Source: Vitrella brassicaformis CCMP3155
Lineage: Eukaryota > Protista > Chromerida
Assembly: GCA_001179505.1 (NCBI GenBank)
Contig: CDMY01000272.1
Coordinates: 1 to 63,947 of the forward strand
Length of the DNA stretch: 63,947 nucleotides
Direction of reading: 5' to 3'
A program made the translations under genes and the position numbers. Below the pieces are notes generated by a model. That model was not told the DNA's origin, did not search any database, and saw only the letters and a list, made by a program, of their open reading frames with translations. How positions within the stretch are numbered: position 1 is the first letter of the stretch; the number at the start of each line of letters is the position of its first letter. Shown here piece by piece: positions 36,495-38,837 of this stretch.

Positions 36495-38837
36495 TCATCT
36501 GTCCCCTCCCTCCGCCACATTAGACACACCACTTGTCAGCGTGAAACGACGCTCATTCCCATCACCATCACCACCCCCACCCCCACCTATGCCCGACATT
36601 AGCTGAGGGGCGGTCATGGCGGCCTGTGGTGGGGGACCGCCTGAGCTGCCTTGGCTGCGTTGACTCTGTTGATGTCCCTGCCCCTGGGACGCTCGCAAAG
36701 CGGGAAGGACTGTGCCGAATGTGGGTAGTCGGACGGGCAGCCCGATGGGCGAGTAGCTGTCTTCCGCCTCGTCTCTCTCCGTCTCTGCGTCTGCTGCCGA
36801 TGCGGCGGGCTGCAGGAGGGTGGCAGAGAGGGGCTCCGGCCGGTGCACGAAGCCTCCTGTGGTGGTCTGGGGCCCGAAGGTGGACGCAGACACAGAGGGG
36901 GTAATGTCGTCCACTGAATGGAATGCAGTGCAGCAGAGAGGGAGAAACAGAAAACGCGAGACTCTGTGTGTGTCTCGATAGACGTGTGTGTGGAAATGAA
37001 TGCTGGCTGACCCTTCTGAGTAGTATCAGGTTTGCGGATGCCCATGGCGTACAAAGGGTCCGTCTCGCTGGAAGCTCCTGTGCGGAGGGAGAGAGAACGG
37101 ACGGGCTGCGCCACCAATCTGTTGATTCATGTGATGCACAGCACACGGAAGGAGGGCAAGGCACAGAGACAGAGAGATTCATTTACACAAGGATGAAATG
37201 AAAAGAGCTGTCTTGTCTCGTGCTGTGCTTCAGGGCCGTGCGTACGTCTCCTTCTCGAACATGCGGTGGTACAGGAATATCCACTTGTCGGGGTCCCGAC
37301 CCTCCATGTGCTTATAGTATTTGGAGAACAGAAAGGACGACACAAAGCCCACAAACAAAGCCATGAACAGGGTCAGCACCTGCATACACACACGCAGAGA
37401 GGGAGGGGGAGAGAACACATACATACTGGATGGATGGATGGATCTGTGCCTGTCTTACTGCCTTACCCTGAGAAGGTTGTTGAGGTCTCTGATGGGCACC
37501 AGCCGCGGGCTGAGCAGGTCGATCTGCACTGTCTCCGTGTCTATCACAAACGGACCTTGCCCTATACACACACACACACACAAACACACAGAGGCGTATG
37601 CAGCAAGGCTCTTTCTCCATGGGCTTCTGTGTCTCACACACCAAAGGTAATGCCGCCCGGCCCCTGTATGGGCCCTTTGTCAGGTGGTGAGGGGTCGATC
37701 GGCTTCTCTTTGTCCTCGTTCTCGTCCACTATGTTGCCTTTCTTGTCGCAGGTGAAACAACCCTCCTCGCGGGCACACAACTGCAGGTCAGGCACCCCAT
37801 ATGGCGAAACAAACAAACAGGTGTGTGTCGTGTGTGTCTGTCTGTCTGTCTGTGTCATGTCATGTGCGGGGGTGTCTGCCTCTCATCCATCGCTCACTCA
37901 CGTGTACGTTGCAGTATAGGAAAATGAACGGCGAGTCGCCCAACCTGAAGAGCGGGAGGGCCATGCGGGTCAGCTCACGCTCTTGCTTCACAAACTCCAC
38001 CTCGATCTCCGCTGCACAACACACAACGACGTATTCGTTGGTATCCCCCTTCCCCTCCCCCCCACACCACACCCCACCCACCGGGCCGCTCGCAGTAGTC
38101 CTTGATGAGGATGACCGCCTGTGGGTCCCCCGCCTCCCCCGACGCCCAGCAGTGCTTCAGGTTGAGCGCAAAGCCCGTCTTGTAGCTCGTGAAGACCTCT
38201 ACTACCAGCTCCTCGCTCCACCGCGGTATCACCATGGGGGGCTCATACAGCCGCTCATCGCACTCCCTGTCCAGACAGGCCTGCATCTGGACATCGAACT
38301 CGCCGCTCCCGCTGACGTTGACGGTCTTGACGCCCTCTCTCTCCACCTGGGTGCTGACGGTGAGGTCCTTGCTGTAAAGGCACTCGACCTCATACCGCAC
38401 CTCGCCCCCCAACAGCGCCCCGCCGCCGATGACCCTCGCCTCGTTGGTGTGGACAATCCACTGGTCGCTGCTGTCGGCGTTGGCCTGTGTTCCGCAGCCG
38501 TCGAGTGGGGTGGACACACAGAGGAGGGAGTTGTCGTCATACGAGTGGCAGGAAGGGTCGGGCGTATCGCTGAACGACCTGCAGACACAGAAAGGGAACA
38601 CACGCACGACACGATGTGGATTATTCATAAACATGATGTGTGTGTGTGTTGGGGATGAGTGCGTTGGTTGGTTGGTTCATGCCAGATGAGGTTTGAAGGT
38701 TCGAGGCAGAGGGTCATGCTGGTGGGGTTGCACGTGAGCGACACGGGGCGGATGGCTGCTGCTGTGGTCACTACGGAGAGCACCACAACCAGCCCCGTGG
38801 GGGAAGGCGCAACGGAAGAGAGCGACATAGCACACAT
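36495..38837 (-). CDS. Zona pellucida (ZP) module protein: signal peptide, ZP-N, ZP-C, EHP-like patch, TM, cytosolic tail
   Basis: LTCNPTSM...DPSC...PLDGCGT...EVECLYSK...GSGEFDVQM...LNLKHCWAS...LIKDYC...PLFRL...FLYCNVHLC...GCFTC...GPFVI...TM VLTLFMALFVGFVSSFLFS. Tail exons after 37240 are less certain; an alternative stop lies at 37230. Confidence 0.85.

What the first reader, a model, noticed from the sequence alone, without database searches (positions are those of the whole stretch)
36495..38837. Complete zona pellucida module in a unicellular alveolate
Seen after splicing: ZP-N Cys1-4 (LTC, PSC, GCG, VEC), IHP-like GEFDVQM, ZP-C Cys5-8 plus a and b (HCWAS, DYC, LYC, LC, GC, TC), FRL, EHP-like GPFVI, TM and tail. 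There is no obvious furin site before the EHP. Known: the ZP module polymerises extracellular filaments (egg coat, cuticlin, uromodulin, tectorins) and is generally treated as animal-characteristic. The gene has host-type microsatellite introns and alveolate neighbours, which argues against contamination. Inference: a ZP-based wall or cyst matrix or a membrane-retained receptor, arising by lateral transfer or from a pre-metazoan origin.
Basis: partly seen in the sequence, partly recalled or inferred. Interest (0 to 1): 0.88.

Follow-up and report, generated by a model that had tools for sequence, protein, structure and literature searches.

The report
Egg-coat-type ZP protein in an alga
A single-celled alga related to malaria parasites (Vitrella brassicaformis) transcribes and splices a gene for a membrane protein whose whole outer part is one complete "zona pellucida" module, which animals use to build egg coats and which reviews still call animal-only.

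Summary
Window 36495-38837 (minus strand) is exactly the coding span of an 8-exon Vitrella brassicaformis gene (CEL98514.1 / A0A0G4ENB2).

- **Splicing.** Spliced contigs in public runs and an independent JGI transcript scaffold reproduce all seven joints.
- **Protein.** The 551-aa product has a signal peptide, ZP-N, a linker with an IHP-like strand, a 6-Cys ZP-C, a 30-residue acidic/proline spacer, an EHP-like GPFVI strand, a TM helix and a 200-aa tail.
- **Pfam.** ZP-C scores 41 bits (cut-off 24.6). ZP-N scores 22-24 bits on partial references (cut-off 24.7).
- **Homology.** An alveolate-only profile hits only ZP proteins in the PDB (GP2 7e-19, uromodulin 3e-18).
- **Fold.** All 31 Foldseek PDB hits with E <= 0.001 for the AlphaFold model are ZP structures. 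ZP-C aligns at Z about 12.
- **Cleavage site.** There is no furin motif.
- **Relatives.** They occur in Digyalum, Platyproteum and Piridium and share four lineage-specific cysteines, so contamination is very unlikely.
- **Annotation error.** The public model misses 17 residues, including ZP-N Cys1, because intron 1 is GC-AG.

UniProt already auto-names the protein "ZP domain-containing protein". I found no paper on alveolate ZP modules. This scan has already reported ZP modules on other DNA of this genome. Function (polymer or membrane-retained receptor) and origin (old transfer or pre-animal) remain open.

The parts
36495..38837 (-). Coding span of the ZP-module gene (8 exons, 551 aa; Vitrella brassicaformis CEL98514.1 / A0A0G4ENB2). 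Exons: 38837-38683, 38578-38082, 38011-37902, 37780-37642, 37561-37467, 37379-37246, 37118-37012, 36913-36495.
   Evidence: Spliced contigs of runs X1, X7 and X8. JGI transcript scaffold L001 is identical to the spliced CDS. Translation. Identity with P0001 and P0011.
38751..38837 (-). Signal peptide (residues 1-29; hydrophobic core GLVVVLSVVTTAAA). An alternative ATG lies at 38828.
   Evidence: Kyte-Doolittle window above 1.6 at residues 9-36. No ATG lies upstream in the transcript 5' end.
38359..38741 (-). ZP-N domain (residues 33-125), interrupted by intron 1. Holds Cys1-4 (C36, C62, C80, C118) plus two lineage-specific Cys (C44, C72).
   Evidence: Pfam ZP-N: 24.0 bits on profile positions 1-74, 22.0 bits on 30-100, 23.8 bits for P0011. 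Family alignment. ZP-N structures align at Z 7.5-8.8.
38579..38682 (-). Intron 1, a GC-AG intron of 104 nt. The public annotation instead uses a GT donor 51 nt upstream and so loses 17 residues (CNPTSMTLCLEPSNLIW), including ZP-N Cys1.
   Evidence: Joint 38682/38577 in X1 and X7. Same junction in L001. P0011 versus the RNA model. The RNA model scores 23.5 bits more against an HMM of the other family members.
38299..38358 (-). Interdomain linker (residues 126-145) with the only N-glycosylation sequon (N139). It is followed by the IHP-like strand GEFDVQMQAC (144-153) and a lineage-specific Cys pair (C153, C158).
   Evidence: Strand assignment in the AlphaFold model. Invariant family Cys columns.
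37739..38298 (-). ZP-C domain (residues 146-268), interrupted by introns 2 and 3. Holds six Cys (C195, C214, C251, C256, C262, C265), read as C5, C6, C7, Ca, Cb and C8, and the FRL motif at 239.
   Evidence: Pfam PF00100 at 41.1-41.5 bits against a cut-off of 24.6. VIA-align Z 12.0-12.7 at rmsd about 3 A to betaglycan and ZP2 ZP-C.
37655..37747 (-). Acidic, proline-rich spacer between the last ZP-C Cys and the EHP (residues 266-296; KK267-268; no furin consensus). Predicted disordered. In animal ZP proteins the activating cleavage site sits here.
   Evidence: Regex scan. pLDDT below 50 for the corresponding model residues 244-275.
37533..37654 (-). EHP-like strand ITFGQGPFVI and following residues (297-310), interrupted by intron 4.
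   Evidence: Beta-strand in the model. ZP-C structures whose alignment extends past the last ZP-C cysteine (uromodulin crystal, betaglycan, ZP2 ZP-C) align to model residues 288-291, whereas filament-form chains stop at about 247. The GP[FVMI] motif is conserved in the family and in Amia CUZD1.
37323..37472 (-). Transmembrane helix (residues 331-351, VLTLFMALFVGFVSSFLFS), interrupted by intron 5.
   Evidence: Hydropathy above 2.0. Helix 304-337 in the model, P0011 numbering.
36498..37322 (-). Cytoplasmic tail (residues 352-551, Gly/Ser/Pro/Thr/Ala-rich), interrupted by introns 6 and 7. It has a juxtamembrane motif shared with the Digyalum relative (G-x-[DN]-P-x-x-[WF]-I-[FY]-x-Y-H, including a YxxPhi-like YHRM).
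   Evidence: Exons 6-8 joined in RNA contigs. Composition. Alignment with P0002.

Best explanation
Shown, about 0.9 confidence. This is an endogenous, transcribed and spliced gene of Vitrella brassicaformis. It encodes a type I membrane glycoprotein whose entire ectodomain is one complete zona pellucida module, homologous to the animal module and closest to the uromodulin / GP2 / CUZD1 kind. The module consists of:
- ZP-N with Cys1-4;
- a linker with an IHP-like strand;
- ZP-C with six cysteines spaced as in uromodulin;
- an EHP-like GPFVI strand;
- then a TM helix and a 200-aa disordered tail.
The protein belongs to a small myzozoan family (Vitrella, Piridium, Platyproteum, Digyalum). The family is marked by two extra cysteine pairs that are absent from the animal sequences compared.

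Inferred, about 0.45 confidence. It works like an animal ZP precursor. While the protein is membrane-tethered, the EHP strand completes the ZP-C sheet and blocks assembly. A non-furin protease then cuts in the disordered acidic/proline spacer between the last ZP-C cysteine and the EHP. The released ectodomain polymerises into filaments of a cell covering, such as a wall, a sporangium coat or a zoospore coat.
For: Gene and transcript:
- All seven splice joints are supported by public run contigs and by JGI scaffold L001.
- The record is a 140-kb Vitrella contig.
- The neighbours are housekeeping genes.

Homology:
- Pfam ZP-C scores 41 bits, above the cut-off.
- Pfam ZP-N gives E 5e-5 to 2e-4 on partial references.
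- An alveolate-only profile against the PDB hits GP2 at 7e-19 and uromodulin at 3e-18 across ZP-N and ZP-C. All 11 hits are ZP proteins.
- The single sequence hits GP2 at 4e-8.
- The best animal hit among 1.84 billion representatives is Amia CUZD1 at 1.3e-5.

Fold:
- All 31 Foldseek hits with E <= 0.001 are ZP structures.
- VIA-align gives Z 14.3 for the uromodulin precursor and Z 12-12.7 for isolated ZP-C domains.
- The Digyalum relative gives the same picture.
- ESM Atlas neighbours are all ZP clusters.

Precursor logic:
- The EHP-like strand is modelled in the beta-G place.
- The spacer is disordered.
- A membrane anchor is conserved in the family, either TM plus tail or a terminal hydrophobic stretch that looks like a GPI signal.
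- GP[FVMI] is conserved at the EHP position.
Against: - There is no furin consensus, and no cleavage motif is conserved across the family.
- No protein-level data exist on cleavage, location or filaments.
- A 200-aa cytoplasmic tail with a conserved juxtamembrane motif is, to my knowledge, unusual for polymerising ZP precursors and fits a retained receptor better.
- The models are of middling confidence (pLDDT 66-67). The Vitrella model was built from the annotated sequence, which lacks strand A.
- The complete ZP-N could not be scored as one piece, and each partial piece stays 0.7-2.7 bits under the Pfam cut-off.
- The kind of the runs that hold spliced contigs is not on record.
Confidence: 0.55

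Rival explanations
1. The protein is a membrane-retained ZP-module receptor or adhesin. It is never cleaved and does not polymerise. Like endoglin or betaglycan, it uses the ZP module to bind a ligand or to dimerise at the cell surface, and the long tail handles trafficking or signalling.
For: - There is no furin site and no conserved cleavage motif.
- The 200-aa tail has a juxtamembrane motif shared with Digyalum P0002, including a YxxPhi-like YHRM/YHHL.
- Betaglycan and endoglin ZP-C are among the best structural matches (Z 12.7 and 10.8).
Against: - By sequence, the closest relatives are the polymerising uromodulin and GP2.
- Most family members have no tail at all, only a terminal hydrophobic stretch. 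The tail is therefore not a family feature.
- The IHP-like and EHP-like strands are conserved.
Confidence: 0.35
2. The locus is animal (for example coral) contamination or an assembly artefact in the Vitrella genome.
For: ZP modules are otherwise known from animals. From my own knowledge, Vitrella was isolated from coral.
Against: - The gene lies in a 140-kb Vitrella contig between PheRS beta and other housekeeping genes.
- Its introns carry the same microsatellite types as the rest of the window.
- The DNA is held by runs of several studies.
- The protein is only about 16-25% identical to the animal ZP structures it aligns with, and 28% to Amia CUZD1 over the exon 2 part.
- Its nearest relatives are other myzozoans that share four lineage-specific cysteines.
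Confidence: 0.02
3. The protein is a pair of Ig-like domains that only resembles a ZP module by convergence and is not homologous to it.
For: - ZP-N and ZP-C are Ig-like, and generic Ig folds appear lower in the structural lists at Z 6-7.
- ZP-N stays just under the Pfam cut-off.
Against: - Sequence-level significance is reached without any structure: 7e-19 and 3e-18 over both domains.
- The ten canonical cysteines align.
- The GP-hydrophobic EHP motif is shared.
- ZP structures stand well clear of generic Ig hits (Z 12-14 against 6-7).
Confidence: 0.03

Closest known systems
Uromodulin (UMOD) and GP2 ZP modules (PDB 4wrn, 6tql, 8xc5)
   Same: - Best sequence matches (family profile 3e-18 and 7e-19) and best fold matches.
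- ZP-N and ZP-C in the same order.
- Six ZP-C cysteines with, from memory of uromodulin, nearly the same spacing.
- A GP-hydrophobic EHP motif after a short spacer.
- A C-terminal membrane anchor.
   Different: - Only about 18-25% identity.
- No EGF or D8C domains in front.
- Four extra cysteines (C44/C72 in ZP-N, C153/C158 after the IHP-like strand).
- A TM helix plus a 200-aa tail instead of a GPI anchor.
- No recognisable cleavage motif where, from memory, uromodulin has its hepsin site.
- The organism is an alveolate alga.
CUZD1 / DMBT1-type ZP modules (Amia CUZD1, P0007)
   Same: - The only animal protein under E 1e-3 in the 1.84-billion-protein search (1.3e-5, 28% identity over 159 residues).
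- It aligns through all canonical cysteines and the LGPI/GPFVI strand.
   Different: - CUZD1 has CUB and somatomedin B domains, an RRRR furin site and a short tail.
- It lacks the four myzozoan-specific cysteines.
ZP3 (PDB 3nk3/3nk4)
   Same: The minimal architecture is the same: signal peptide, one ZP module, EHP, TM. The fold matches at E 1e-7.
   Different: - ZP3 has a furin site, a ZP-C subdomain and a very short tail.
- Sequence similarity is weak (profile E 5e-5, ZP-C only).
Endoglin and betaglycan (TGFBR3) ZP modules
   Same: They are type I membrane proteins with a ZP module next to the membrane, a cytoplasmic tail and no activating cleavage. ZP-C matches at Z 10.8-12.7.
   Different: - From my own knowledge, they are TGF-beta co-receptors with large orphan domains.
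- Sequence similarity is limited to ZP-C (E 8e-7).
- No ligand system of that kind is known in alveolates.
Other ZP-module loci of the same Vitrella genome reported earlier by this scan
   Same: Same genome and same module. Some are also membrane proteins (s1-226918), and some are said to have relatives in gregarines and Cryptosporidium (s1-201633).
   Different: They lie on other DNA pieces and I did not have their sequences, so paralogy with this gene was not tested. Several carry furin-type sites or extra domains that this gene lacks.
ZP-like domains of choanoflagellates (Salpingoeca rosetta), as described in PMC13361971
   Same: They are ZP-related sequences outside animals.
   Different: [quoted passage not shown] The Vitrella protein has both, and it lies outside Holozoa.

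Membership tests
ZP module proteins (Pfam ZP-N PF23344 + ZP-C PF00100) | ZP-C domain recognised above the curated threshold | tested here: met
   PF00100 scores 41.5 bits (P0001) and 41.1 bits (P0011) against a cut-off of 24.6, covering profile positions 2-126 of 133.
ZP module proteins (Pfam ZP-N PF23344 + ZP-C PF00100) | ZP-N domain recognised above the curated threshold | tested here: inconclusive
   The complete RNA-supported ZP-N had no single reference. Residues 1-112 score 24.0 bits (profile 1-74). Exon 2 scores 22.0 bits (profile 30-100). Annotated P0011 scores 23.8 bits. The cut-off is 24.7. Family member P0012 passes at 26.6 bits. The family profile aligns to uromodulin ZP-N from strand A on.
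ZP module proteins (Pfam ZP-N PF23344 + ZP-C PF00100) | Conserved cysteines C1-C4 in ZP-N and C5-C8 (plus Ca and Cb in the uromodulin type) in ZP-C | tested here: met
   C36, C62, C80, C118, C195, C214, C251, C256, C262 and C265. Eight of these are invariant columns in the alignment with Amia CUZD1, C36 aligns with CUZD1's first ZP-N cysteine once the RNA-supported sequence is used, and the last pair lies in a gapped stretch. They also align to cysteines of GP2 and uromodulin. Disulfide pairing itself was not tested.
ZP module proteins (Pfam ZP-N PF23344 + ZP-C PF00100) | Two Ig-like folds of ZP-N and ZP-C type | tested here: met
   All 31 Foldseek PDB hits with E <= 0.001 are ZP structures. 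VIA-align gives ZP-C Z 12-12.7 at rmsd about 3 A and ZP-N Z 7.5-8.8. These are predicted models with pLDDT 66.9 and 65.5.
Polymerising ZP precursors (ZP3, uromodulin, tectorin type) | EHP strand after ZP-C, followed by a membrane anchor | tested here: met
   The ITFGQGPFVI strand is matched by the end of ZP-C structures that retain the EHP. TM helix at 331-351.
Polymerising ZP precursors (ZP3, uromodulin, tectorin type) | Consensus furin-type cleavage site between ZP-C and the EHP | tested here: not met
   No R-x-[KR]-R in the protein, only KK267-268. The site is not conserved in the family.
Polymerising ZP precursors (ZP3, uromodulin, tectorin type) | Assembly into extracellular filaments | not testable with these tools
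   This needs protein work: localisation, proteomics and EM of the recombinant ectodomain.
Canonical ZP module as a metazoan synapomorphy (PMC13361971) | Occurrence restricted to animals | tested here: not met
   The host genome is Vitrella brassicaformis. The relatives are from Digyalum, Platyproteum and Piridium.

The most novel reading that the evidence does not exclude
The canonical ZP module is not an animal invention. It was already present in the common ancestor of chrompodellids and apicomplexan-like lineages, either by descent from an early eukaryote or by a very old transfer. There it builds a polymeric extracellular coat activated by a non-furin protease, which would be the first ZP filament system outside animals.
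Probability: 0.25. Interest if true: 0.85.

Novelty: new member of a known kind. Interest (0 to 1): 0.7.

Why it matters
ZP modules underlie animal egg coats, uromodulin filaments, tectorins and cuticlins. A 2026 review defines the canonical module as a metazoan synapomorphy. A complete, expressed module in a free-living relative of apicomplexans, with relatives in three parasite lineages, changes that picture in three ways.

- It makes the origin of the module testable, as an old transfer between animals and myzozoans or as a pre-animal origin.
- It adds ZP to the animal-like extracellular domains of the apicomplexan lineage.
- It offers a minimal ZP protein, with nothing but the module in its ectodomain and no furin site, for asking what is really needed for polymerisation.

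The corrected exon 1 boundary also matters for domain surveys. The public model lacks Cys1 and so looks less complete than the real protein.

Tried and rejected
1. My first gene model ran exon 6 to the in-frame stop at 37230 (381 aa).

2. The annotated exon 1 donor (GT, P0011) is not seen in the contigs. The joint is the GC-AG one. Contigs drop rare forms, so a minor isoform is not excluded.

3. Word-index protein searches with P0001, with P0011 residues 25-345 and with the family alignment returned only the query or its inputs. They say nothing about distribution.

4. The metagenome scan failed. The six-sequence alignment had no usable pattern. The three-sequence alignment matched 173 stretches, none confirmed.

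5. I could not fold or Pfam-scan the complete RNA-supported protein as one sequence. No single reference exists, because L001 has a 10-N gap, and I did not paste sequence.

6. Literature:
   - No paper links zona pellucida to Vitrella or chromerids.
   - Papers holding 'ZP domain' with Apicomplexa, or 'zona pellucida' with alveolate or apicomplexan, were unrelated to alveolate ZP proteins by title and abstract. The one I opened concerned a GO term.
   - The chromerid genome paper and its held supplements do not mention ZP.
   - Searches were badly framed and uninformative.
   - Templeton & Pain 2016 is not held.

7. AlphaFold DB cluster hits hid the organism names, so they gave no taxonomic information.

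8. No second ZP gene lies in this window (tblastn).

9. Hits P0005, P0008 and P0010 of the representative search are repeat-rich proteins without ZP domains. I set them aside.
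Full report
**What is there**

The finding lies on the minus strand. Reading the sequence and translating all frames gave a first six-exon model of 381 aa ending at a stop at 37230.

Laying public run contigs on 36300-39100 corrected it. Exon 6 ends at 37246. Two further introns (37245-37119 and 37011-36914) lead to a last exon that ends at the stop at 36497-36495.

The final model has eight exons:
- 38837-38683
- 38578-38082
- 38011-37902
- 37780-37642
- 37561-37467
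- 37379-37246
- 37118-37012
- 36913-36495

It totals 1656 nt and encodes 551 aa.

A 2717-nt contig of run X7 carries all exons in order, and X1 and X8 carry subsets. The joint 37642/37561 was hidden by a repeat filter but follows from the piece lengths.

A JGI transcript scaffold provides independent support (L001, sample 3300017297). It was found by looking up protein P0001. It is identical to the spliced CDS over 336 + 1326 nt, with 69 nt of 5' UTR and 18 nt past the stop. A 10-N scaffold gap flanked by a 6-nt duplication interrupts it.

The kind of the runs is not on record. Contigs lacking all seven introns are best read as cDNA.

**Whose gene it is**

The product is in the public collection as P0011, which is CEL98514.1 / UniRef100_A0A0G4ENB2 from Vitrella brassicaformis CCMP3155. 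It sits on a 140,612-nt contig, and UniProt names it 'ZP domain-containing protein'.

The neighbours are ordinary eukaryotic genes:
- A phenylalanyl-tRNA synthetase beta chain lies on the plus strand (B3_4 and tRNA_synthFbeta domains). Its poly(A) end is at 36379.
- A proteasome PC-repeat protein lies at 28027-29061.

Introns of the ZP gene hold (CA)n, (GACA)n and (GGAT)n runs, as does the rest of the window. Runs from several studies hold the DNA. Contamination is therefore very unlikely.

**An annotation error that matters**

Intron 1 is GC-AG (38682-38579). The joint is ambiguous by two bases, and only this placement gives a known splice type. The mRNA is the same either way.

The public model instead uses a GT donor 51 nt upstream. 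It thereby deletes 17 residues (CNPTSMTLCLEPSNLIW), which carry ZP-N Cys1, strand A and a family-conserved Trp.

I built an HMM from the five other family members only. Against it the RNA-supported protein scores 200.8 bits and the annotated one 177.3 bits.

**Is it a ZP module?**

*Pfam*
- ZP-C: 41.5 and 41.1 bits, E about 2e-10, above the cut-off of 24.6, covering profile positions 2-126 of 133.
- ZP-N could only be scored on partial references:
  - residues 1-112: 24.0 bits, profile 1-74;
  - exon 2: 22.0 bits, profile 30-100;
  - annotated P0011: 23.8 bits.
- The ZP-N cut-off is 24.7. I expect the whole domain to pass, but I could not show it.

*Solved structures, by sequence*
- A profile made only of the six alveolate sequences hits GP2 (7e-19) and uromodulin (3e-18) over both domains from strand A on. 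It then hits ZPD, betaglycan, ZP2 and ZP3. All 11 hits are ZP proteins.
- The single sequence hits GP2 at 4e-8 and uromodulin at 8e-7.

*Fold*
- The AlphaFold model of P0011 1-345 has pLDDT 66.9.
- All 31 Foldseek PDB hits with E <= 0.001 are ZP structures, led by uromodulin at 2.4e-11.
- VIA-align gives Z 14.3 to the uromodulin precursor. It gives Z 12.0-12.7 at about 3 A rmsd to the betaglycan and ZP2 ZP-C domains, and Z 7.5-8.8 to ZP-N domains. Generic Ig folds follow at Z 6-7.
- The Digyalum relative P0002, whose ZP-N is complete, gives the same list.
- ESM Atlas and AlphaFold DB neighbours are ZP proteins throughout.

*Caveat.* P0011 lacks strand A, and the Vitrella model uses the signal peptide as substitute strands. 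The N-terminal 30 residues of that model should be ignored.

**Anatomy**

| Residues | Element |
|---|---|
| 1-29 | Signal peptide |
| 33-125 | ZP-N with C36, C62, C80, C118 (Cys1-4) and two extra Cys (C44, C72) |
| 126-145 | Linker with the only N-glycosylation sequon (N139) |
| 144-153 | IHP-like strand GEFDVQMQAC, followed by an extra pair C153/C158 |
| 146-268 | ZP-C with C195, C214, C251, C256, C262, C265 |
| 266-296 | Disordered acidic/proline spacer |
| 298-307 | Strand ITFGQGPFVI (EHP-like) |
| 331-351 | TM helix |
| 352-551 | 200-aa tail rich in Gly, Ser, Pro, Thr and Ala |

The spacing of the six ZP-C cysteines (19, 37, 5, 6, 3) is, from my memory of uromodulin, close to its C5, C6, C7, Ca, Cb, C8 spacing.

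The four extra cysteines are invariant in all six alveolate sequences. They are absent from Amia CUZD1, uromodulin and GP2 at the aligned positions.

There is no R-x-[KR]-R. The only dibasic pair outside the cell is KK267-268, two residues after the last cysteine.

In the structural alignments, ZP-C chains whose match extends beyond the last ZP-C cysteine match the model up to residues 288-291. These are the uromodulin crystal form, betaglycan and ZP2 ZP-C. Filament-form chains stop near 247. This is what one expects if GPFVI occupies the EHP (beta-G) place.

**Relatives**

HMMER against 1.84 billion representatives, with the exon 2 product as query, found ten hits under 1e-3.
- Besides the protein itself, the best are from Digyalum oweni (8e-18, and an EGF-ZP protein), Platyproteum vivax (7e-15 and 1e-10) and Piridium sociabile (1e-5).
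- One animal protein appears, Amia CUZD1 (1.3e-5).
- Three repeat-rich proteins without ZP domains are noise.

The parasite data are transcriptomes of cells taken from animals. However, the shared extra cysteines and the higher similarity to Vitrella than to any animal protein argue that these are parasite genes.

Digyalum P0002 has the same architecture as the Vitrella protein, including a tail with a shared juxtamembrane motif. The other members end in a hydrophobic stretch with no tail, which looks like a GPI signal.

**How it most likely works**

*Shown.* It is a membrane-anchored protein whose ectodomain is nothing but a ZP module with IHP-like and EHP-like strands.

*Inferred from the animal paradigm (about 0.45).* The EHP keeps the module assembly-incompetent until a protease cuts in the spacer. 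The released module then polymerises into a coat or wall component.
- In favour: the closest relatives by sequence are polymerising proteins; the EHP motif and the membrane anchor are conserved in the family; the spacer is disordered.
- Against: no cleavage motif is conserved, and the long tail is unusual.

*Main rival (about 0.35).* It is a retained receptor or adhesin of the endoglin/betaglycan kind.

Contamination and convergence are each a few per cent.

**Origin**

The family occurs in chrompodellids (Vitrella, Piridium) and in Platyproteum and Digyalum. It therefore predates their split if inherited vertically.

With about 20% identity to animal modules it is not a recent transfer. Descent from an early eukaryote would require many losses. 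I therefore lean to one old transfer from an animal into the ancestor of these lineages, but I could not build the tree that would test this.

One Atlas lead points to unannotated diatom clusters (scores 0.80-0.82, below the tool's bar). It is untested.

**What is known**

A 2026 review calls the canonical module a metazoan synapomorphy and treats the choanoflagellate sequences as incomplete relatives (PMC13361971).

I found no paper on ZP modules in Vitrella, chromerids, alveolates or apicomplexans. I also found no mention in the chromerid genome paper or its held supplements.

UniProt's automatic name shows that databases already detect the domain.

This scan has reported ZP modules before on other pieces of this same genome. 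I did not have those sequences and did not test their relation to this gene.

**Verdict**

This is a new member of a known kind in an unexpected lineage. Function and origin remain open.

Noticed in passing
window 38579-38734 (minus strand): The public gene model (CEL98514.1) mis-places the exon 1 donor. RNA shows a GC-AG intron, and the annotated GT donor removes 17 conserved residues including ZP-N Cys1. Domain surveys based on the public proteome will under-score this ZP-N.
   Followed up: yes
window 33170-36379 (plus strand): A phenylalanyl-tRNA synthetase beta-chain gene (B3_4 and tRNA_synthFbeta domains) ends with a poly(A) loose end at 36379, tail to tail with the ZP gene. The X7 contig runs through both, so the 3' ends lie close together or overlap.
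   Followed up: partly
window 38919-39414 (plus strand): A divergent neighbour starts within about 100-150 nt of the ZP gene's 5' end and is read more deeply in run X1 (17-33 against about 5). Its ORFs suggest a small secreted acidic protein (hydrophobic N-terminus, DDDEDEED stretch) with no Pfam match. The two genes may share a bidirectional promoter.
   Followed up: partly
ESM Atlas neighbours of P0011 residues 25-300: With ZP-annotated clusters left out, the nearest unannotated clusters are hypothetical proteins whose commonest phylum is Bacillariophyta (350 aa with 183 members, and 386 aa with 53 members; scores 0.82 and 0.80). This is a lead for ZP-like modules in diatoms. It is below the tool's reliability bar, and no sequences were available.
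   Followed up: no
family alignment: Family members split into two anchor types, as animal ZP proteins do. Vitrella and Digyalum P0002 have a TM helix plus a tail, with a shared motif G-x-[DN]-P-x-x-[WF]-I-[FY]-x-Y-H containing a YxxPhi-like signal. Platyproteum, Piridium and the Digyalum EGF-ZP protein end in a bare hydrophobic stretch that looks like a GPI signal.
   Followed up: partly
window 28027-29061 (minus strand): An ORF with a proteasome/cyclosome (PC) repeat, probably part of a 26S proteasome regulatory subunit gene.
   Followed up: no
window 3873-7856: The scan's index lists another first-reader note on this window (a secreted arylsulfotransferase fused to three trefoil domains, s1-239478). 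I did not examine it.
   Followed up: no
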